From Podarcis erhardii (lineage: Eukaryota): a stretch of DNA of 64,000 bases. Numbering within the stretch: position 1 is the stretch's first letter; every line of letters starts with the position of its first letter. Under the pieces are notes generated by a model. It saw only the letters and a program-made list of their open reading frames with translations. It searched no databases and was not told the DNA's origin. A program made the translations under genes and the position numbers. Below, piece after piece: positions 10,035-63,430 of the stretch. Location: NCBI GenBank assembly GCA_964252035.1, contig OZ176204.1; one strand, given 5' to 3'.

Positions 10035-10350
10035 TAATGGAATAATGGAATTGAGTAAGCATGTGAGTCATTAAGTAGGAGTCTGTCTAAATGTCTTGGT
10101 GTAATTGGACAAACCCAGCATGAGGGAAGGAAGCTCCCAGCATTCACGAGGAGAGTACATAAGACAAAAGTTTATTTGAGCATTAATCCTCCCATGTTCA
10201 CTGATATGGGGAAAGGGACACACTAAGTAGCCTCTCCCCTTTGCCTTTGTGTGAAACGCACAGCCAGTCATCTGTAGCAATGGAGCTTCCAGACATACAG
10301 GTTTCCATGTGACTCAGAAACTATACAAGTAAGCTTACGGTTTGCAAGTA

Positions 10351-10574
10351 CAGTGGTACCTCGGTTTACGAACTTAATCCATTCCGGAAGTCCGTTCTTA
10401 AACCAAGGCATGCTTTCCCTAACAAAGCCTCCTGCCACCAGTGCCCTTCCACCATTCAAATTCCATTCTTAGACTGAGGCAAAGTTCTCAAACCAAGATA
10501 CTATTTCCGGTTTTGCGGAGTTTGTAAACCAAATTGTTCTTAAACCGGACTGTTCTTAAACCGAGGTACCACTG
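10351..10574. mobile_element. Tc1/Mariner (Tigger-like) MITE
   Basis: TIR cagtggtacctcggttta / taaaccgaggtaccactg with TA TSD. Confidence 0.9.
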
Positions 10575-13500
10575 TAATGCTTTGTGCATGCAGCAGTCCA
10601 TGAAAATGTGCTGTAGCTGTTATGCTCTTTAGACAAAGGCATGCCATGTAGTCTCTCCCCCCACCCACTCCCCTGCTGAGGAGCATGGGAGCATTAACAC
10701 CCAAATATGGCTAGAGGCTTTAATCTACAGAGGTGTGAGAACTGCTTTGCTGCTGTGCAGTTCTAGGATCCTGCATACAAACAACCTCATGAATGTGATA
10801 ATTGTGTGGGAATTTACACAGTTGTTCAGTTCAAAAATACTCCCTGCACCCATACTCACACCCATACAGCTGCAGATTTGTGCAAAGAGAACAACAGAAT
10901 TAAATTCATCACAGAAATGATCAATGGTCCAACCATATCACATAAGAGCACACCAAAATATGATACACAATTCCACTCATCTAGGCAATTTAGGTTACAA
11001 TCCTAACCCAACTTAATTCGGAGTAAGCCCAGTGGAATTCAATAGGATTTACATCTGAGTAGTAGTGGTTAAACTTGCACAGTTAGCTAGCTTTTTGGAG
11101 TTATCCTGCTAGATTAAAAGGGTTCACTTTGAAAGTAATCCTATGACAATTTAAACCACAGATCTCAACATTTTACATTATATATATTCAACATAGTTGT
11201 CATAAGAAAATTAAATAATACTTTTCTGAAAGTGCTTTATCATCATCACATATTTGTAAAACTATGAACAAAATTAAAGAAACATACTGTGATTTTATTA
11301 ACTGGGCAAAAAGTGAATGAAATATATTGGTGCTGGTTAAACAGTAATGGCATTTGCATTGAATAACTTGTCACATCCAGGTTTAAGCCTGGTCTTCAGA
11401 CTCTTCCTTGCAAAAATTATGCATCCGCATTGAGCTCTGTCTTTCCTGAGATAAAAGCATGTCCTGAATATTCTCTAGTCTTCAGGGCTACTAATTTGAA
11501 CAGGCTTGTCACTCTAAGTCTAGGGAGTTGTGGGATATTGACATTATATTGAATTATTTAAGGGGAAATAACAGTGCTTCTCATCCTATGAGATTGCTAT
11601 TTCCAAGCAACGCATAGCATTCTTCTTATGTTCATGTTAGCCCCAGTTTTTCAGAATTATATACAATGAAAAATAAAAAGGCAAGAAATAAAGTTGCCTA
11701 GTTATGCATGACTTCACAGAGAAACTGCATGCAAAGCCCCAAATTTCTGCAATTCACAGCCCAAGTCTACTCTGAAATCCATTCCATTCCATTGGGCTTT
11801 TTCCTAAGTTAAGTGGTTATAGGATGACAAACTCAGCTTCCTTTTGTCTTGTGATAAGAAACAAAATATTACAGATGAACTTCTGCCTCAGTTTATATAT
11901 TGTGTACTATATATCACATAATATTACATACTAAAGAATACCTACAGTTCTGTTTAATTAAGGATATATACCAAGAGACTTGTCAGTCAGACCCCTATGA
12001 CATAGAAGTTCACAATCAGACCTTCTTTAAAAACCACCCAAATTACCAATAGCTTGGAGACGCTACTCACAGGGATCTTGCCCATTCTGAAGCAGTGGTA
12101 ACCTCAGTCTTCTCACAAATATCAGGGGGAAAGTCCACGGAAAGGACAGGGAGCAAAATACTCTGTTTCAGAACTTTACTTTATACTTTAAGCAGAGAGA
12201 AGGTAACAGAACCTCACAGCAGAAAACCCATTTATTTGAAAACAGCCATTGACTTGGTCTTCAGGGTAGAAGGGAGAAAAGACAGGGAAGAGAAACCAGA
12301 GAAAATTCACACTGTATTCCAGCCACTATCACCCAAAGAAATAGACTAGATGTGGTGGGAAATAATCTCACGATAGGGCTAAATCAAACTATGGTAAAAT
12401 ATTGTGTATTCCAAAAACAGCAGTCCGCAATTGTCAGCACCGTCGTTTATATCAGGTTTTTAAACTTTTCCCAGTAACAATTCCACAGGGAGGTCAGCTA
12501 ATCAAACTAAATTTGTGGTCTCTTATTGTCTGTAACAGCGGCTGGGCAGCTTTCCTGGGGCACTTGGAAGGTGCACAAAAAGAGTGCACTCAATTACTGG
12601 GCTAGAAGCAAAGGAAGTCCCACCATGACCCCCCTCACAGACCTATTACAAGGATAGAACTAGAATTCCTTGGAGCTATCTGGTATTAATAATGGTGTAA
12701 GCAGCCAACCCTTTCACCAGTATCACCCTGGAAACAATTGAACGGATGCTTAAGTTTGGCAAGTTGTGACACTCGCAATCTAAGAAGGAAGATGCCAAGA
12801 AATCTGCTGACTGCTGTAAGTGAGAAATTCCAATGTAGGGGTGGAATTCAATGTAGTGCTGACTAGCTCATTCCACCAATGCAAGAGTTTCTGCTTGTCA
12901 GATGGTATGCTCCCTTAGTCTCTCCCTGCGCACTGTTCTGGGGGTTCTCCTGACCTGACCTTCCAGAGCAGTTTTGGGAAAGGCACTGGGGAGGAGAGGG
13001 GGATCCTTGTGCTGGCTTCCGCTAGCATAATGGGATAGCTAAATCCAGCCCTTGTATTTGAAAGAGCAGAGGGAAGAAATGGTCATAGACTTTTAAAGCA
13101 TGCAGCTGGAATACATCCTTGAGGTTGTCAGGTGGCTGAAAGTTTCTCCTGGAGACTTTAGAATCCTAACTGGCATCATTTGTCCATTCAAGTCCAATGG
13201 GCACATAGCTGTGTTAGAACGTTCCTTTTGTAAGCACTACCCATGTGATGCAGATTGAGAATTAAGAGATTGCCAGTTATCTGTGTAATAAGTTCCTTAG
13301 CCTTTGTTACTCACAGAAAGGATTCATCTACAACATTTACTGGGTGGGTGTGTACTCCCATTGTTCACACCATATGATTGCTAAAAATGGAATTCATTTT
13401 TTGTTTGCTTGTTTTTTTTCTTTTCAAAGATGAAACAAAGAAACAATAAAGGATTTCCTACAAACAAAAAAGGAGAAGACAGAAAGATCTTGGGAAGATA

Positions 13501-23279: not shown

Positions 23280-23672
23280 TTGTTTAAATAACCTCTGTTC
23301 CCACCCCTAAATTGGCAACATCAAATTTACCCCAGTAACACCAACCACCAATCTGATCCAAGCCCCTTCAATCTATCCTGCCTGGCAACCATGGGGTGCT
23401 TTGCTCGGCCCCATCCGCAACACGTGCTCTCCTTTAATGAGAACATGCCTTACCAGAAGGACCAGTGTATTGGGGTGAGTGATATACAGTGGATGGTGTG
23501 AGACTGAATTATGCACACTAACTAAAGGATTCTGTCCCACCCAGAGCATATTATGTTAGGTATATTTGATTTTATTTTTTTTAAATGGACTCATACCAAT
23601 TAGGCAGAACACAACACATTATTTATGTAGCCACAGTTATGTTTCTTTATCTATAAGATCAGGATACCAGTA

Positions 23673-23884
23673 CAGTGGTACCTCGGGTTACAGACGCTTC
23701 AGGTTACAGACTCTGCTAACCTAGAAATAGTACCTCGGGTTAAGAACTTTGCTTCAGGATGAGAACAGAAATAGTGCAGTGGAGGGAGGCCCCATTAGCT
23801 AAAGTGGTGCTTCAGGTTAAGAACAGTTTCAGGTTAAGAATGGACCTCCAGAACGAATTAAGTTCTTAACCCGAGGTCCTACTG
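23673..23884. mobile_element. Tc1/Mariner (Tigger-like) MITE
   Basis: TIR cagtggtacctcgggtta with TA TSD. Same family as the 52605 copy. Confidence 0.9.
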
Positions 23885-24329
23885 TATACAAAATGTTTCA
23901 TTACCATCTCCTAACAATGTCCCCTCAGTATGACCAGCCACCCTTCTAGGTTTCAGACGTCAGCTGATTCACAAAGTTGGCAGAACTGGGATGGTAAGAG
24001 TTGTAGTTCATCCATCTCAATTATTACTGGCACCTCAATCGAAGCACTGCATAAGCAGTGACACTACAAACACTGACACTACAGTTTGGCAGATATTCTA
24101 TCATAAATTGCCCACCAACCTTATACTTTCGTTTGGAAAACTCTCTCTCTCTTTTTTTTAATGAAAAAATGTTAGATGTTTGCAGAGCACTGAGAGATGC
24201 AAATATGCTCCTTTATGATTTACAAGATATGAAGTTTATCATTTCACTCAACGTTCTTCAAGCAGCTTTCTGTAAGGCAAGGGTAGTACTAGGTGCATCA
24301 CAAGCTAACTTATTTATGGTTAAGTAGCA

Positions 24330-45700: not shown

Positions 45701-47199
45701 GTAACTTTGCATTAATGTAACATTTTTAATGTAACTGTACTTTTGTAATATTTAAAGTTTTCTGTTGTTGCTTCGGTTTTCTATATACCACTAAGAGATA
45801 TTTTTTAATATAGTAAGTGTTGTAGAAATTAAATAATCAATCAATGCTTTTGACAGCTGGCAAATATCCTTTTACTCGCCTATGTCTTCCACCGTACCAT
45901 CTTTTATTTTATTTATTCCTAGTCCTCCAAACAGTTCTTACTGTTCCTTCTGTGTTTTATTTTTATGCAAGTTTCCTACTGTATATTAAATATTGTTTAA
46001 AACTGTTGAGAACCACATAAAGAGTGATGCACAAAAGGTTTTAAAATAAATACGCTGCAAAAATAAATATGCTGTCAAAATGTCGTGTGATTTTTCTCAG
46101 AGTCACCTTTCCCCCAAAGAGCAAAAGTTTATTTAATCCATCCCTTCCATCAAATTTGAGAATGACTCTACACATCTTCATCTTCACTGCTTATATCATT
46201 CAATTTTTAGGACTTGGAAGAGCTGTGCTTCTATAGTCAGGGGAGACGAACTGTCTCAAAATGTGCTATATGTGTACCTTGCTGCATAATCAACATCTTA
46301 CCAGGAGCTGATAAATTGTTGTACTTATAACTAAAAAGGTTTGGCCAATATGGAACACACACAGTTGGTTCATCCAGGAACTGAATGCAAAACCCAAGGG
46401 AAATAAAACATTTCAACGTAGTAACTCCATCCTCTTGCAACTATTGCAGCTGTGGCCAAACTTTCTATCACTATCCTGGTCAAAACAGTGAACATTCAGA
46501 TAAAATTGCCTTGTGGTCCAAATTCAGCTCATGACTTTGAATACTGTGCAAAGATTCCTATGGTGAAAATCGATAGGTTAATATATTGAGAACAGAGAGA
46601 TTTCAGAAACTTTTGTCCTAAGTTATTCCTGCCCTCTTGCATTTTCAAAGCAAGATTTCCCTCTCCTTGAGCAAAAACATACACGTAATTATAGATCTTC
46701 TATAGCACCATAGTACTTTTTTCCCGAGGTTCCAACCTAGTTTATGAATGTGCTCATTACACAATGAAAAGTCAGGACAGTTGCTCACTATAAACTCACC
46801 TCAAGGTAAAATTTACATTGACTTCAAAAGTCTTGCCTCCGGGAGGGAGGGAGGGAATCAGATGAATTTCTGAAGAGTTTCCGTTTTATAAGCTGTGTGT
46901 GTTACCAAAATACCACTATTTTTGGCATGGCATGATTTTTTGCCAGGTACAAAGGAACTTAAATGTAAGTCTTTGTATAGCAAAAATACAGAAGTATGTC
47001 TTGGGAATGGTCTTAGCACTCTAATCCTGTGATCTTGCCCAAGCACTTTGAGCAAGAATATATTCTCATAAGGAAAACTAGAGCACTTTAAAAAGGGAGG
47101 GGGAGAAAAAACACTACAAATGGTCTAATATGCCTCTTGCTCACACAAGAGTAGAATCGAACTAAATTCAGCTGGATATACTGCACAATCCTGCCCATA

Positions 47200-47272
47200 T
47201 CTACTCAGAATTCAGATTTATTGAACTCAATGGGGCTTAGTCTCTGGTGAATAGAATTAGGATTGAAGCCTT
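47200..47272. repeat. Ancient short palindromic reptile repeat (caatccta...tcaatgggactta...taggattg family)
   Basis: Representative copy. Related degenerate copies near 1430-1495, 10995-11075, 11750-11830, 17095-17185 and 63525-63610. Confidence 0.55.
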
Positions 47273-47399
47273 ACTTCCTAAAAAAAAGAGGCTGAGGGTT
47301 GCAGCTTAATCTTACTAGGTTGAATTCAGACTGAGCTGAACTACTGAAACCAATGCGAAAGCCAGCCATGTTCAATGAAGTTCAAAACTTGCTGCTTCT

Positions 47400-48330
47400 G
47401 AACAAACATGACTCGTTACAGAGAATAAAAATTTTAATTTAAGAGGTACGGTATATAAAGTCAGAGTGTTTTGTCCCCCCCCCTTTTTTTTTCATTATTT
47501 CAGCACGGGCAAGCAGTAATTTAAATTTTTCTTAAGCAGTAGATATTTCAGATAATGTTTGCAGTCCCTCGGTTCTCAAACCATCTAGCAGATGTAGCTC
47601 CAGTTCTGATTTAATTGATACAAGTGTGAAGTAAATTGCTACTGTTAGAGGTTCTCCCCCCACCCCACAAAGTCCATTTAACAAATGCGTTTAAGGGAAT
47701 GGCAGAAGAATACCAGCTCACTGAAAGGTTATAGGTATTCTAGAAATGGGGGAGGTTACTTATTTGAATATGCCACATTCAGTGCGCTCAATAGGGAACA
47801 AAAATGGTAATGACATTTTCATTGAACAGAATATAGAGTCTTACAAGGTAAAATAGCAAGTATTCCTGATGCCACCCAATATTATCAATAAGCAACAACT
47901 GCTGGTACCAAAACAAAAAACAAAACCTACACACACTATTATATACCATTATAGATGTTATAATAAATCATAATTTAGCTGTAAGTGTTTAACTCCCATT
48001 TATACCTTACATTTTTATCATGGGAATCATTATAAATATACGAATTGTAATTAAAAAGTGGAAAATTAGCTGTGTGAGGTGAAATTAAGGACTCTGTAAA
48101 CGAACAAGCCGCTTTAAAAGGTTAACAGGTGTCCAATATTATATATATAAATTTATGGTCTACTTTGATTCACCTAAACCTTTGTTTCCTTGAAGCGGGT
48201 TTCTCTTCTATTTTTATTTTATGAATAGTGTGACAATAATGTGGGAGTTATAGTTGCAGTGTGAACAAGAGGTTTCATGAAGCTTTTTGAAGTATTTAAA
48301 GAAACTATTCCCACAAGTAGGCTTCATGTT
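47400..48330. promoter_or_regulatory. Large putative conserved enhancer block just downstream of the exon
   Basis: About 900 bp without recognisable TE. PBX-HOX site ATAAATCA (47963-47970), TTTATGG (48152-48158), CTTTGAT (48163-48169), CAGGTG. Confidence 0.45.
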
Positions 48331-48866
48331 GTAACTTTGGTAGCTATCTTAAGTACACTTTGGTCAAGGAAGAACTTCCCTTAAATACTGCCGCAATAGG
48401 TTTATAAAACTGATCCAGAATTTTTAAAATGTCATTCTGTCACGCACATACATACACACACCTCTGCCTACAAAAATAGAAACCATCCTTAATTATTTTC
48501 AGACTGAAATTAATTTTCCATTCAGATACAGTGTGGCTGCATATCAATTTCTCATGCTAGGAAAAGTGGAGCTCATTAAAAAATAATAATAACATTCTTT
48601 CCAGCCCAAATTCCTTGTGTTCTGAATCTGAATTAATAAAAAAGAAACACACAAATAAGAAGCTTGCTTATGAAATGTCCCTTTTGTTCAGTAAAACTGT
48701 GTTTCAAACAATCATCATAAGCCCAGTTTGAAGATCAACAGTTATGACCAGTGGGTTTTTTTGTGACAGCACTCACCAGTACTGAGTATCATCATCTCTC
48801 TTTTTTGCTGCCCATGGTGGCCATTTTGTGCTGGCACCCATGGCTCTTTGATCAAAAATAAGAGTA

Positions 48867-49094
48867 AAGTGGTACCTTGGTTTGCATACGTATTGGTTTG
48901 CATATGTTTTGGATTACAAACACGTCAAACCCAGAAGTGCATGTCCAAGTTTGCAACCTTTTTTTGGATTGCAACCCTTCCCCCCATTTTTGGGGGATTA
49001 CAAACAAAAAATTTTTGAAAGCCCCATTACAACCTGTTTTGGTTTACAAATGGACCTCTGGAACGGATTATGGTTGTAAACCAAGGTACCACTG
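48867..49094. mobile_element. Tc1/Mariner (Tigger-like) MITE, 275 bp from the exon
   Basis: TA|aagtggtaccttggtt ... aaccaaggtaccactg|TA. Confidence 0.85.
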
Positions 49095-49229
49095 TACTGG
49101 CCCTCTCACTTTATACCAAAAAAAAGCACTCGTTCCTTAATAAGATAACTTAATACACTTTTATAAATGATACAAAGGGGGGAAAATGTATTTAACTTGA
49201 TGGATATTTCAAAGAGCAAGAACTGAGAA

Positions 49230-49235
49230 TTTATT
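49230..49235 (-). terminator. Candidate intronic polyadenylation signal AATAAA
   Basis: Minus strand reads TAG tggg AATAAA ttctcagttcttgctctttgaaatatcCA, followed by U/GU-rich sequence (tttgtatcattt...gtgtattagtt). Confidence 0.5.
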
Positions 49236-49239
49236 CCCA

Positions 49240-49368
49240 CTATTTCATAATGTGTTTAACTGGAGAAGGCAAAAAGTGACAAGCAATACTCATTAAACCC
49301 GTTCCTCTTTCCCTCCACCAAAGAAACAGAGACACAGAAACAAAAGTAGTGCATCTTCGTTTACTTAC
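49240..49368 (-). CDS. TCF7L2: Putative intronic read-through extension of the exon (composite terminal exon): +VSKRRCTTFVSVSLFLWWRERGTGLMSIACHFLPSPVKHIMK*
   Basis: The frame stays open 42 codons past the donor to TAG at 49242-49240 and is followed by AATAAA. Usage is inferred, not shown. Confidence 0.45.
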   Translation of the reverse strand, partial: VSKRRCTTFVSVSLFLWWRERGTGLMSIACHFLPSPVKHIMK

Positions 49369-49470
49369 AACAATGTGTGCTGGAGATGGAGACCTAGCAT
49401 CCTTGAGGGCTTGCCTGCTCTGTAGGCTCCCTGCCTGAACATCAAGCAGTGGCCATTTCATCTGCAGGTA
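49369..49470 (-). CDS. TCF7L2: TCF7L2 internal coding exon, 102 nt, phase 0/0, encoding YLQMKWPLLDVQAGSLQSRQALKDARSPSPAHIV (between the beta-catenin-binding region and the HMG box)
   Basis: Reverse strand reads long pyrimidine tract ...ccccatttttgtttcctccatccAG | TACCTGCAGATGAAATGG...GCACACATTGTT | GTAAGT. The translation matches the human TCF7L2 peptide as I recall it, and the exon is 34 whole codons. Confidence 0.97.
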
Positions 49471-50388
49471 CTGGATGGAGGAAACAAAAATGGGGAAAAA
49501 GAAAAATGAGTTCAGAAAACAAAGGCAACTTTAAAAATAAAATAAAAGCAAACACATATTAGGCAACGTGGGGAAGTAAGTGAAACTAAAATGCATGCGA
49601 CAAAAATAAAGTAAAAGCCCCACAGAAATACTTTATTGGGGTTATGTTGAACAAAAATGGAGTGTACAGACATTTCCAAGGTGTTTACTAAAAGGGGAAT
49701 AAAAGGGCAAACACAATGTTCTGTTTCATATGTCAATCGCTATGGTAAATCTGGAAAGGAAAATTATTCAGAGGACGGAAGGAATAAACAGGGCAACTCA
49801 TCGTTACCACAATTGCAGGAATAGAAATATCTGTGAATCCCGGAACAGAAAAAAGTAACTTTAAAACTGCACATTAACGTTGAAAAATCTGGCATTAAAG
49901 CTGATAAACCAAGTAGGGAATGGCTGAAAAGCTACTGCCGGAAAATATGCCTTCTAAAAGTTAAACAATTTTTTTTTGCGGGGGCAGGGGGCGGGCAAAT
50001 ACATAACATGGGTTCCCTCCCATACTCTTATTACAATCCCATTCCAGACATACAATCTCATGAGTTATGAAACAAAGCTTTTTATGTTAATTCTGAAATT
50101 ACATTTTCTACATTTCTGAAATTACACCACTGAGAGTAGGGTGGAGAAGGAGGCAGGGTGCAAACCAACCAACAGTAGCACCAGATTGACTCCACGAGTG
50201 TGTCTGCACCATGCTGCCCGCCCCACTGCCTTTCCACTCTCCCTCACAGTAAGCCGCCCGCCCGCCGGGGACCTAGCATAGTGGGCTCTGCCCAACCCAA
50301 CAAGTTGCTTTGGCCTAATGGACTACCATAGCTACTAACAGTTTATAAATAGACTAATTCACTTTAAACCACTATATTTATATAGCCT

Positions 50389-50998: not shown

Positions 50999-52604
50999 TC
51001 ATTGTGCTCTTCCAGTCATTACATCTGTGCAAGCATCTCAGCTAGCCAGGAACCATTATCGCCCTATCATTTATGTGGGACTCTCCCTCCAGGAGCCAGT
51101 TTCGGGGAGGGTTATACAGGGAGGAAAGCCCCATTGGGCAAGCGGAAGTTCTTGTGCAGGTCTTCTGCTGATGGGGTTATGTTAGGTGAATCCTGCCCAA
51201 TGTATCCAAATACAGGAAACAGGTTTCCATAAACATCCTCAAGCAAGATCTGCAACTTTGACTCATTCCCTCCGGCTGCCCTGTCATGGTAATAAAATTG
51301 CAATCTGGGCCAGGAACCCAGGCCCTGGTAAAGTGTGTCCTTCTCTACTCCTTCATGCAAGACAACATCTATGATGGGCAGTACAGTGCTATTTTCAAAG
51401 TGTATGTTTCAATTTTTGAACCCCATTTTAAAATCCCTCCTCTGAACCATTCCATGCATTATGCACATGCCAACACCCATCCATCACAGAGCTGCAGCGT
51501 GCCAGAATCAGCTAAAGTTCTGCATCAAGAATATGAATGGTGGTAACAGTCCTACATCTGACACACATACATTCAAAGCTGATATTTTTCATTTGAAACA
51601 TCACCAATACATCCCTAAAATTGTAATGGGAAAAGGGGCTCTCATCTGCAAAGCACAACAGATAGTCTTGAAGAAGCCCCCAACCCCAACCAACCCCCCT
51701 GTGTTGGTGTTAGGCTAAAAAAACTGCCCACGAAAGAAGGGGTGGGTGGGTGGGCATGGCAAGGTGGCAAAATAAAATGAAAACAGATTAGAACAGAGAA
51801 AAGAGACAAGTGGATTCTCCAGATATTTGTATTGTCAATAGGTCAGCATCACTTATAACAATGATCATACCCACAGTGTTGTATCTGCATGCTGCTCTCT
51901 TCAAAAGACAGCCATGTCTTGAGTTCTGTTAGTCTAGCAGAGCAATTTCCTCTTTGTCCATCAGCACAAGTTATAAAAGATAGTCGGTTGGAATACATGT
52001 GTCCCCATGACGTACAAGCAACCTCTTTGCATAAGTCACTAGATTGCCCGTGAAACTGAGACTCCGTAAACAATCCTGTTCATGATGCACAAGCAGGAAT
52101 AGGGTACAGCTCACTCCCTCCAACAATAGCAGCCAAGGCTTATTCTCGTTACTGAGGTCACTAGATAGGATTCGGGATACACAGGAAGCAGGTCCTGCTG
52201 AGAAAGAATGTGCTGAATTTACCTAGTCACTTTTCAGCACAAGCTCCAGTGAGGCTTTACAACTGACCTTTACTGGGAGAACGGGGGTGGGGGGGGAGAG
52301 AGAGAACCACCTCACACACAAATACTTAGCACTAGCAGGATAATGATAGTCTGGACTCTGTTCTCCAGTTGCTAGATTTTCATATGTAGGCCTTCCTTCC
52401 TATTGGCAGCAGTCACTGCAGAAGTGGTATAGCCCAGCAACTATTACATAATGAATAACTGCTGATCATGTGTTTAAGCTCTGACAAGAATGGCTGTTAA
52501 AATCCTTGCTTAGGTTACCACAAGCATCAGGTTTAATGCTGGTTTAAGGAGTGCAAAACATTTTGTTACTACACAGAGGCTAACCTTTTGTTTAAGAACA
52601 AGTA

Positions 52605-52849
52605 CAGTGGTACCTCGGGTTACAACATACGTTTCAGGTTACAGATGCTTCAGGTTACAGACTCTGCTAACTCAGAAATAGTACCTCAGGTTAAGAACTT
52701 TGCTTCAGGATGAGAACAGAAATCGTGCGGTGGTGGTGCGGCAGCAGCGGGAGGCCCCATTAGCTAAAGTGATGCTTCGGGTTAAGGACAGTTTCAGGTT
52801 AAGAACGGATCTCCAGAACGAATTAAGTACGTAACCGGAGGTACCACTG
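52605..52849. mobile_element. Tc1/Mariner (Tigger-like) MITE
   Basis: TIR cagtggtacctc / gaggtaccactg with TA TSD. Interior homologous to the 23673 copy. Confidence 0.9.
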
Positions 52850-55800
52850 TAATTTAACAATGCTGCTCAATGCAATATATATTTATTGGGAGTCGTAGCC
52901 AAAAACTATTATCAAAAATAGAGGCCCAGTTCCCTCACTTGCAGTTTGGAGACTATCTAATCATATCAGATTCTAAACATAATTGCAGCAACCAAAAGGG
53001 ATCTCACACTCTTCCTTATACATTTTAACTGCAGTCTTTTTTTGCTAGGATTCCCCCACTCCCTCCCAAATATTAAATACCAATTAAAAAAAAACCTTTC
53101 TAAAAGGTGCCATTTTTCTTCTTTTGTAGTCAGTCTTTGGAAATAAGTAGAGAGAGTGTGCTGGTAGGGAGATGTCAGTAGGGGGACTGTGCTGGGGTGG
53201 GAATCAAATCACTGTACCAAAAGATAATTCAGATTCTGCTACAAGACTCAAACCAGATTAAATATTTAAAAATTTGATCAAATTTGGAAAAGATTTTAGC
53301 TTCTTCTGCTAAATTTATTTTGAGTTTGCTCATTGGAGGGATTATCTATGTAGCAAACTGAAGCCCACATCTCAAATCACTGGAAAACTTGCTACTGAGA
53401 TTTCACTAAGCTTTGGTTACACGCTTCCAAACTTATCTTTAAAAGCTTAAGGACCTGAAGAATGTTTCTGTTTAAGAGGAAATCCTGAAAGTCTCAAAGT
53501 GTGAAAATCTCTACCAATACTATTCTGACATTAAAAGGTGTGATCTCAAAATATGTAGAACTATGCCTTAAAAAATCAATGCGTGTTATTAGCAATAAGG
53601 ATGGTATTACTAGCAACAGATATTATGCTGATACATAAACCATGGGGTAAACGAACTCAATCAAAGACTAGAGTACTGTACAGCAATCAATGAAGTAACC
53701 TCCAAGTGAAGGTTACTATGGAACGCAAACACAAAGAAGACCTGAAAAAGCTGTCTTCATCAAAATTTAAAAAAACTATGCTGCTTGCTAAAATGATTCT
53801 CCAGCAATATTCTCCAGAAAGCCTTTTTTTTTTGTAAAGACACTATCACAGGCCCAAAAGACCCACTGAAGCTCACCTTTTTACATACCACTTCACTGCT
53901 GCTTGTATTCCCATCACGAGAAACTGTTGTACCTGCTTTGCAACCTATGTTCTTCCAAATAACACCAACACCGTATAGTCAATAGGTTTCAGCTAACAAC
54001 AAACCCAGTTCAGAGGAAAGGCTCTGTTCTCTTTCTGTGTTAGCTCTGCCCTCAGTGGAGTAATCACACAGCTAAATCTGATTGGTTATGTGAAAATATC
54101 TACTGCTTGTAAGAAGGGGACTATACTGAACATACACAAAAATGGTGTCAAAGCTGCAGCCAACAGGGACTTCAAACACACTTTCAATGGAATTGTATCA
54201 CCACCACTGCCTGAATGACAGGCACAGGGGCCACTAGTCACCTGAATGTGTGTGAGGGACCACCTTTTCTTTGCAGTATACCTACCACCTGCAGAGAGAG
54301 AGAGAGAGAGAGACCCAAAAACTTGATGAAAGGGGGTGCATTTTATGAGCGAATAAATTTGTGAATCCCTCAATCCCTACCCCCTGGTTTTAGCTCATCC
54401 CTAATAAAAAGATCCAGCTCTATTGATAAAAGAATACGTTTGTTTCGTTCAACAGCTTCAAGCTTGCCTCAAAGTCTCTCAGCCCAGGAATTGTCATGGC
54501 CATAATACAATATTAATGTGGTGGCTTATAATTCTTATTTTACATAAAAGCTTCATTGTGTGCCAAATCCAATCTCCACAGGCTACCTGAGCCCCAGATT
54601 TTTACGAGTCTACATTTCAGCGCTGCGAGTCTACAATACACATAATTTTCAATTATGTTAGGGCAGGGCAGGATCACTGCCTATATAACATTACTGGTTG
54701 GAGGAAATGAGACTCAGTCCTACTGCCGAGTGAGCTAACTCAATCCAGATGGTGAGAGAGTGAGAAAGAGAAAGCACTGCTATGGAATTATGTAGCAGCA
54801 ATCCAGCCCACAGCAACTCTTGCACAATGGAATGAACTGCCAAGTAATTGCCCCACCATCCACACACAATGCTTTAAGGTATTAGTTTGGAAACTAAAGA
54901 AGGGATGGTTCTTTTGGCAGAGGAAGGGTTACATCACAGCACTTACACAGCATATATTAGAAGGAGAATGCGTAATTGCCTTCTCGGGTTTACTATTGCA
55001 GAATTATGCAACTAATCAGAGGGGTCTCTCTCTCTCTCTTTCTCTCTTTAATAGTGTTTTGTTTGTTTTTTAGAGTTTTTTTGGGGGGGGGGGTTGTCCC
55101 ATTACTAGAGAGTGGTAAATCCTTTCCTTCCTCCTACATGAAACAGCAGGAAATGCTATTCTTTCAGACTCAAATACAAATGTGAGCCAGGAGTCCCTTC
55201 AACTTGCAAGCGTCTGCAAAAGGAGAAGGTGAAGGGAGGAGGGAGTGAGATATTTCCTTCACAGGATCCCAACTTTGTGTCTATATCATACAGTAAAGAG
55301 AGAATCCAAATACTCTGTTCTATAAAAATTGTGTAATTTCTTGTCTTTTCCAGCCTTACTTCTATTTGACAGGAAATATTATGTTCCAACAAACTGGTGT
55401 AATATTAAAAACAGGGGGGGAATGTATATAGGTTCTGATGTCCCATTTTAAAGCTGAAATATTAATATAGATATACTGGCCAGAAGTTCAATATTGATTT
55501 AAAAGGATGATCTAGCAATAGATCATTATTGCTTCTTCTGTTTTTGAGAGAGAGGAAGAGAGAACTCCAAATCTTTTAAGGCTCCTACTGTCTGTGCAAA
55601 ATATTATAATGTGTGGCTGGCTAGAATCTGTGCACAGGGGGTGGGTGAGGAGAAACACAACACACTCCTGAAAGGCTGTTAAATTGTCATCACAAGGGGG
55701 AAAGCAAACACCTCAAATGGCAAAGGATAGGGCTTTTTAAAAAGTGGAGAGGGAGGAGGAAATGTATCTTGGGTCCTGCAAGAAAGCAGATGTTATCAAC

Positions 55801-63215: not shown

Positions 63216-63430
63216 CAGTCGTCCCTTGGTTCTTGAACTTAATCCGTTCAACTCCCGAAACGGTTCGTAAACCAAGACATGGCTTCTGATCGGCTGCAGG
63301 AGCTTCCTGCAGCCAATTGGAAGCCGCTTTGCAAAAACGTTTGCAAACCGGAACACTTACTTCCATGTTTGCGGCATTCGGGAGCCAAAACATGCGAGTA
63401 CCAAGGCGTTCGAGAACCAAGGTATGACTG
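63216..63430. mobile_element. Tc1/Mariner-like MITE
   Basis: cagtcgtcccttggttct ... agaaccaaggtatgactg. The flanks lack an intact TA. Confidence 0.75.

What the first reader, a model, noticed from the sequence alone, without database searches (positions are those of the whole stretch)
49200..49470. Stop codon plus AATAAA just past the exon donor: predicted TCF7L2 isoform with beta-catenin-binding domain but no HMG box
Seen: ignoring the GTAAGT donor extends the TCF7L2 frame by 42 codons to TAG (49242-49240). AATAAA follows 4 nt later, with a CA about 28 nt downstream and then U/GU-rich sequence. Established: this exon lies after the beta-catenin-binding domain and before the HMG box. From memory, a human intronic poly(A) isoform at this position that inhibits TCF/LEF targets has been reported (Locke et al., Diabetologia 2011). 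Inference: the lizard may make the equivalent beta-catenin decoy, which would suggest amniote-wide conservation.
Basis: partly seen in the sequence, partly recalled or inferred. Interest (0 to 1): 0.75.

Follow-up and report, generated by a model that had tools for sequence, protein, structure and literature searches.

The report
Untested poly(A) signal after TCF7L2 exon
A lizard TCF7L2 exon is followed 127 bases into its intron by an in-frame stop and then an AATAAA that could cut the message short, as happens in the same human intron, but the motif is missing in the nearest relative I could obtain and no RNA could be examined, so it remains an unproven and probably minor or silent site.

Summary
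The minus-strand TCF7L2 exon is 49470-49369 and its GTAAGT donor is 49368-49363. Reading through gives 42 codons, TAG at 49242-49240, AATAAA at 49235-49230, CA 28-32 nt later and a U-rich stretch.

The cited paper (Locke 2011, PMC3210366) holds. Its 3'RACE primer spans the same exon-intron junction, so the human intronic poly(A) isoform uses the orthologous intron. But the human cleavage site is at intron +1100 and the lizard candidate at about +165, so they are not positional equivalents.

Chance explains much of it:
- AATAAA falls within 200 nt of 16% of random points on this strand.
- A 42-codon open stretch has P of about 0.07-0.10.

The downstream context is better than average: only 4 of 90 sense-strand hexamers in 49 kb of this intron match it.

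In the closest relative found (L001/L002), the upstream exon flank aligns strongly (z 15.5). The intron aligns only for about its first 31 nt, and there is no AATAAA or ATTAAA in 654 nt.

Verdict: a plausible, lineage-specific, unverified site. Amniote-wide conservation is not supported. The scan had not noted this before on other DNA.

The parts
49369..49470 (-). TCF7L2 coding exon (34 codons, YLQMKWPLL...AHIV). It is exon 5 in the 17-exon numbering and 'exon 4' in Locke 2011.
   Evidence: Homologous ORFs and a spliced PF08347-bearing fragment. The junction matches the human primer.
49363..49368 (-). 5' splice site GTAAGT, extended to GTAAGTA: seven consecutive intron-side matches to the U1 snRNA 5' end. 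The exon side is GTT, which is non-consensus.
   Evidence: Conserved in L001/L002. The U1 pairing rule is from established knowledge.
49243..49368 (-). 42-codon in-frame read-through tail, not conserved
   Evidence: No Pfam match. Does not align to L001/L002 after about +31.
49240..49242 (-). First in-frame stop codon (TAG) after the ignored donor
49230..49235 (-). Canonical AATAAA hexamer at intron +134 to +139. It is the first AATAAA/ATTAAA in the intron; the next is at +1151.
49198..49202 (-). Candidate cleavage positions (CA at 49202-49201 and 49199-49198), 28-32 nt after the hexamer. Inferred, not observed.
   Evidence: No 3'-end data.
49150..49197 (-). U-rich and partly GU-rich candidate downstream element (..ACATTTTCCCCCCTTTGTATCATTTATAAAAGTGTATT..)
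   Evidence: T fraction 0.42, top 9% of hexamer contexts in the window.

Best explanation
This is a lineage-specific, canonical-looking but unverified poly(A) signal at the very start of a very long TCF7L2 intron. It most likely arose by chance in AT-rich intron sequence. It is most likely silent or used only at a low, stochastic level.

Shown:
- The exon, the donor, the stop, the hexamer, the CA and the U-rich stretch.
- That the human gene polyadenylates in the orthologous intron, but about 1 kb further in.
- That the lizard motif region has no alignable counterpart in the nearest relative available.

Inferred:
- The site lies only 134 nt from a donor with seven consecutive intron-side matches to U1. 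U1 snRNP bound there would normally suppress cleavage (telescripting).
- So full-length splicing should dominate.
- If any message does end here, it would encode the N-terminal part of the protein, which includes the beta-catenin-binding domain, plus 42 unconserved residues, and would have a 3' UTR of only about 35-45 nt.
For: - Chance rates: AATAAA 0.95 per kb on this strand, P = 0.16 of one within 200 nt. P = 0.07-0.10 for 42 or more open codons.
- No conservation: against L001/L002 the upstream 150-nt flank gives z = 15.5, while intron +13..+162 gives z = 1.4 and +100..+200 gives z = -0.5.
- blastn aligns only +1..+31 of the intron.
- L001/L002 have no AATAAA or ATTAAA in 654 nt, and their first stop is at +262.
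- The human site is at IVS+1100, not at this position.
- There is no UGUA in the 100 nt upstream.
- No RNA-like run in the index holds more than 0.20 of the sampled words. That is about what the exon alone would give: 72 of 351 possible words.
- U1 protection of pre-mRNAs from proximal intronic poly(A) signals is stated in the abstract of PMC5499120. The abstract of PMC10227441 describes widespread intronic polyadenylation that is currently attributed to stochastic variation in pre-mRNA processing.
Against: - The hexamer is the optimal AATAAA, with a CA at the ideal distance.
- Its U-rich downstream stretch is matched by only 4 of 90 sense-strand hexamers in 49 kb of this intron.
- It is the first hexamer a polymerase meets.
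- The human orthologous intron does support widely used intronic polyadenylation behind a nearly identical donor. So this donor evidently does not fully protect a very long intron.
- The RNA runs carry different organism codes from the best DNA holders and were never laid, so their low word share says little about this species.
- The relatives are unnamed, and one of them is distant.
Confidence: 0.55

Rival explanations
1. It is a working composite-terminal-exon poly(A) site. In a share of transcripts the donor is not used before cleavage at about 49200. The result is a stable message with its stop in the last exon, and so outside the reach of nonsense-mediated decay. Its product keeps the beta-catenin-binding domain, lacks the HMG box, and sequesters beta-catenin like the human isoform.
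For: - Canonical AATAAA, CA at +28 to +32, and a U-rich downstream stretch in the top 9% of the window's hexamer contexts.
- Best context on the sense strand for 34 kb.
- The stop lies upstream of the hexamer.
- The human gene makes such an isoform from the same intron, and that isoform inhibits a TCF reporter in a way that depends on beta-catenin binding.
- The intron is at least 49 kb long: no other TCF7L2 exon motif was found in the window. A long intron leaves a long time for cleavage before the acceptor is made.
Against: - No RNA evidence at all.
- The site is absent and the region unalignable in the nearest relative.
- Its position differs from the human site.
- It lies 134 nt from a donor with seven consecutive intron-side matches to U1.
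- There is no upstream UGUA.
- The tail is unconserved and partly hydrophobic (FVSVSLFLWW), and has no family match.
Confidence: 0.3
2. Lizards do polyadenylate within this intron as mammals do, but at another signal further in, as with the human +1100 site. The +134 hexamer would then be a bystander. The protein made would be the same, because the first in-frame stop at +127 precedes every candidate site.
For: - The human site is about 1.1 kb into the intron.
- Locke et al. report mouse transcripts extending into the same intron.
- 90 sense-strand AATAAA/ATTAAA hexamers lie in the part of the intron inside the window.
Against: - The only other hexamer in the first 1.4 kb (48218, +1151) has a purine-rich, U-poor downstream context: T 0.24.
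- The next well-set hexamers are 34-38 kb away.
- There are no RNA data.
Confidence: 0.15

Closest known systems
Human TCF7L2 intronic poly(A) isoform (Locke et al., Diabetologia 2011, PMC3210366)
   Same: - Same gene and the orthologous intron. The published 3'RACE primer spans the same exon-intron junction.
- Same logic: donor ignored, a short unconserved tail, a stop, a poly(A) signal, and a product with the beta-catenin-binding domain and without the HMG box.
   Different: - The human cleavage is at IVS+1100, leaving a 3' UTR of roughly 1 kb. The lizard candidate is at about +165, leaving a 3' UTR of about 35-45 nt.
- The human site has 3'RACE, qPCR, western and reporter support. The lizard site has none.
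- I made no sequence comparison with human DNA, by rule.
Mouse TCF4N (Kennell et al. 2003, as described in Weise et al. 2010, PMC2847248)
   Same: An N-terminal TCF7L2 fragment with the beta-catenin-binding domain and no HMG box. It is made by ignoring a splice donor, and it diverts beta-catenin.
   Different: It arises at the donor of exon 8, three exons further on, so it is a longer protein made from a different intron.
Cryptic intronic poly(A) signals held silent by U1 snRNP (telescripting)
   Same: A consensus hexamer close behind a U1-binding donor, in a long intron of a long gene, with no conservation.
   Different: Whether this one is silent is inferred from its position, not measured.

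Membership tests
Locke-type TCF7L2 intronic poly(A) isoform | Lies in the intron that follows the ...SPSPAHIV exon | tested here: met
   The lizard junction ..GCACACATTGTT|GTAAGTAAA matches the human primer ..GCACACATTGTC|GTAAGTAAC.
Locke-type TCF7L2 intronic poly(A) isoform | In-frame stop ahead of the poly(A) signal, so the product ends before the HMG box | tested here: met
   TAG at 49242-49240, 4 nt before AATAAA. That the HMG box lies in later exons is established knowledge. No later exon is in the window.
Locke-type TCF7L2 intronic poly(A) isoform | Same position as the human cleavage site (IVS+1100) | tested here: not met
   The candidate cleavage is at about +165. The only hexamer near +1100 (48218, +1151) has a poor downstream context.
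Locke-type TCF7L2 intronic poly(A) isoform | Messenger RNA 3' ends with poly(A) at the site | not testable with these tools
No RNA run in the index holds the intron words.
Locke-type TCF7L2 intronic poly(A) isoform | Product binds beta-catenin and lowers TCF reporter activity | not testable with these tools
   Needs expression and a TOPflash-type assay.
Functional vertebrate poly(A) site (sequence definition) | AAUAAA or AUUAAA hexamer, with cleavage after CA 10-30 nt downstream | tested here: met
   AATAAA at 49235-49230. CA at +28/29 and +31/32.
Functional vertebrate poly(A) site (sequence definition) | U-rich or GU-rich downstream element | tested here: met
   T fraction 0.42 over 50 nt, top 9% of 224 hexamer contexts. 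UGU and GUGU are present.
Functional vertebrate poly(A) site (sequence definition) | Upstream UGUA (CFIm) motifs | tested here: not met
   None in the 100 nt upstream. This feature is an enhancer, not obligatory.
Conserved regulatory element of amniote TCF7L2 | Motif alignable and kept in related squamates and other amniotes | tested here: not met
   - L001/L002: no hexamer in 654 nt, and the flank aligns at chance level (z 1.4 and -0.5) against z 15.5 for the upstream flank.
- L003: first hexamers at +525 and +670.
- The species of these contigs are not known to me.

The most novel reading that the evidence does not exclude
Amniotes keep the function but not the sequence. Each lineage would maintain some poly(A) signal in this one very long TCF7L2 intron, so that a beta-catenin-binding, HMG-less decoy is always made. 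The signal's position would turn over: +1100 in human, about +165 in this lizard, elsewhere in others. The lizard version would have an unusually short 3' UTR of about 40 nt, sitting just behind a donor with seven consecutive matches to U1.
Probability: 0.12. Interest if true: 0.55.

Novelty: new member of a known kind. Interest (0 to 1): 0.22.

Why it matters
If the site were used, a reptile would make the same kind of Wnt-pathway damper that has been tied to the human type 2 diabetes locus. That would argue that the truncated isoform is an old, selected part of TCF7L2 regulation and not processing noise. As it stands, the data argue against sequence conservation and say nothing on use. So the finding is a reasonable target for a cheap RNA check, not a result.

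Tried and rejected

2. Run index. The RNA-like runs hold at most 0.20 of the words, which is about the exon's share. They carry other organism codes, so this is uninformative for this species.

3. Exact look-ups of two intron-only ORFs, one of them also tried with M in place of the GTG-coded first residue, found nothing on record.

4. A pattern scan of metagenome contigs with a 23-mer from the conserved upstream flank gave two low-GC chance hits.

5. Pfam on the exon peptide and on the tail alone gave nothing meaningful.

6. Rfam on 46500-49423 gave only sub-threshold chance hits.

7. Kennell 2003 (PMC165725) is not held. I used Weise 2010 instead.

8. I considered whether the site is repeat-derived and rejected it. 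49099-49356 is single-copy in the window.

9. I considered whether the mouse TCF4N isoform is the same event and rejected it. It comes from a different intron.

10. P0002, has a tail that translates the human primer. I take it for human or a close primate, and I did not fetch, align or search it further.

Full report
**What is there**

On the minus strand the window holds one TCF7L2 coding exon, 49470-49369. It has 34 codons (YLQMKWPLLDVQAGSLQSRQALKDARSPSPAHIV). A long pyrimidine tract and CAG precede it, and GTAAGTAAA follows it.

Reading on in frame gives 42 codons and then TAG at 49242-49240. The mechanical ORF list shows this as a 73-aa ORF from the internal ATG, and a translation confirms it. 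Four bases later comes AATAAA (49235-49230, intron +134 to +139). CA dinucleotides lie 28-29 and 31-32 nt past the hexamer, and the next 50 nt are U-rich with UGU and GUGU.

So this exon stands alone, and the intron behind it runs for at least 49 kb.

**Gene and exon identity**

A word search with the 77-aa read-through ORF returned 24 short ORFs called on contigs of many vertebrates. All share the exon peptide and then diverge.

One of them, P0017, is a spliced fragment that continues ...AHIVSNKVPVVQHPHH... and carries PF08347, the beta-catenin-binding N-terminal family. This fits the exon lying after that domain. That the HMG box is encoded by later exons is established knowledge.

The tails after the donor range from 5 to 87 codons and stop at different places. 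Ignoring this donor therefore gives a truncated product in every species. The predicted protein is not evidence by itself.

P0002 has a tail that translates the human primer given below. I take it for human or a close primate and did nothing more with it.

**The literature claim**

Locke et al. 2011 (PMC3210366) reported the following for what they call intron 4 of human TCF7L2:
- an alternative poly(A) site found by 3'RACE;
- wide use across tissues;
- a band of about 20 kDa;
- inhibition of a TCF reporter that depends on the beta-catenin-binding residue D16.

Their gene-specific primer reads GCACACATTGTC|GTAAGTAACC. The lizard junction reads GCACACATTGTT|GTAAGTAAAC.

But the human cleavage is at IVS+1100, about 1 kb further in than the lizard candidate. 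The mouse TCF4N isoform, which the paper calls similar, comes from ignoring the donor of exon 8, in another intron (PMC2847248). I found no report of such an isoform outside human and mouse.

**Chance**

- The window is 60% A+T. AATAAA occurs 61 times on each strand.
- 16% of random points on the minus strand have one within 200 nt downstream.
- 42 or more open codons has P = 0.066 from composition and 0.10 empirically.

The context is better than average:
- T fraction is 0.42 in the 50 nt from 15 nt past the hexamer, which is the top 9% of 224 AATAAA/ATTAAA hexamers.
- 11 of 224 hexamers are as good on U content, GU-type triplets and a CA.
- On the sense strand within the intron, 4 of 90 are as good, and the next is 34 kb away.

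The thresholds were the candidate's own values, so these ranks are generous. There is no UGUA in the 100 nt upstream. The second hexamer, at +1151 (48218), has a purine-rich downstream context.

**Conservation**

One hit, P0005, begins its tail VSKRR like the lizard. Its two Logan contigs are L001 and L002.
- Their exon is 96% identical to the window's.
- The 150 nt upstream of the exon align at z = 15.5 against shuffles.
- The intron aligns only for about the first 31 nt.
- Intron +13..+162 gives z = 1.4, and the stop and poly(A) signal region (+100..+200) gives z = -0.5.
- Their first in-frame stop is at +262, and there is no AATAAA or ATTAAA in 654 nt.

L003 is a more distant vertebrate contig whose upstream flank barely aligns. 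It has ATTAAA at +525 and AATAAA at +670.

The species of these contigs are not known to me, which limits this test.

**RNA**

The run index listed 24 runs.
- Three runs of one organism hold 0.94-1.00 of the sampled words. Three runs of another hold 0.74. Each of the six has 1.3-1.6 thousand million letters kept, so they are most likely genomic DNA.
- Every RNA or RNA-like run holds 0.11-0.20. The exon alone would account for 72 of 351 possible words (0.21).
- Those runs carry different organism codes and were never laid. This is at most a hint that spliced message is what those samples hold.

The decisive test was therefore not run.

**Mechanism**

The donor matches U1 at seven consecutive intron positions (GTAAGTA). 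Its exon side, GTT, is non-consensus (the pairing rule is established knowledge).

U1 snRNP protects pre-mRNAs from cleavage at nearby intronic poly(A) signals (abstract of PMC5499120). Widespread low-level intronic polyadenylation is described, and is currently attributed to stochastic variation in pre-mRNA processing (abstract of PMC10227441). A hexamer 134 nt behind such a donor should therefore be mostly silent.

Against that, the human gene shows that a nearly identical donor does not fully protect this very long intron.

My estimates:
- chance or cryptic site, silent or minor: 0.55;
- working composite terminal exon: 0.30;
- intronic polyadenylation in this intron but at another signal: 0.15.

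**Other checks**

- The read-through region is single-copy in the window, so it is not repeat-derived.
- Just downstream, 48863-49098, lies an inverted-repeat element that has other copies in the window.
- Rfam found nothing above threshold in 46500-49423.

**Verdict**

It is not supported for positional equivalence or amniote-wide conservation, and use of the site is untested. If real, it would be a new member of a known kind. Interest is low to moderate.

Noticed in passing
window 48863-49098, with copies near 10347-10579, 23667-23886, 52601-52851 and 63333-63424: A MITE-like element of about 235 bp with inverted ends (CAGTGGTACCTYGGTTTAC...). It starts about 100 nt past the candidate cleavage site. 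In pre-mRNA it could fold into a hairpin.
   Followed up: partly
window 49474-49623 against L001 (upstream flank), and window 49207-49356 against L001 (downstream flank): Conservation around the exon is strongly one-sided. The 150 nt before the acceptor align at z 15.5. The intron after the donor loses all alignment after about 31 nt. The upstream flank may hold branch-point or splicing-control sequence.
   Followed up: partly
window 49338-49368; L001 778-812; protein tails: The first 30 nt or so of the intron share an AAGATG-type block. Translated, it reads KRR/RRKMFF in the two squamate-like sequences and KKMFF, KKMIF or KKTFF in several mammal-type ORF tails. It may be a short intronic element kept across amniotes. 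The resemblance is by eye only.
   Followed up: no
L002 1044-1065: This public Logan contig ends in Illumina adapter sequence (AGATCGGAAGAGCACACGTCTG). That is an assembly artefact, not biology.
   Followed up: no
window 47199-47255 (+): Sub-threshold RNase MRP match (19 bits against a gathering score of 50, E 0.0076). I take it for chance.
   Followed up: no
window 48218-48213 (-), intron +1151: The second AATAAA of the intron lies close to the distance of the human cleavage site (+1100). Its downstream context is purine-rich and U-poor (T 0.24), so it is an unlikely counterpart.
   Followed up: partly
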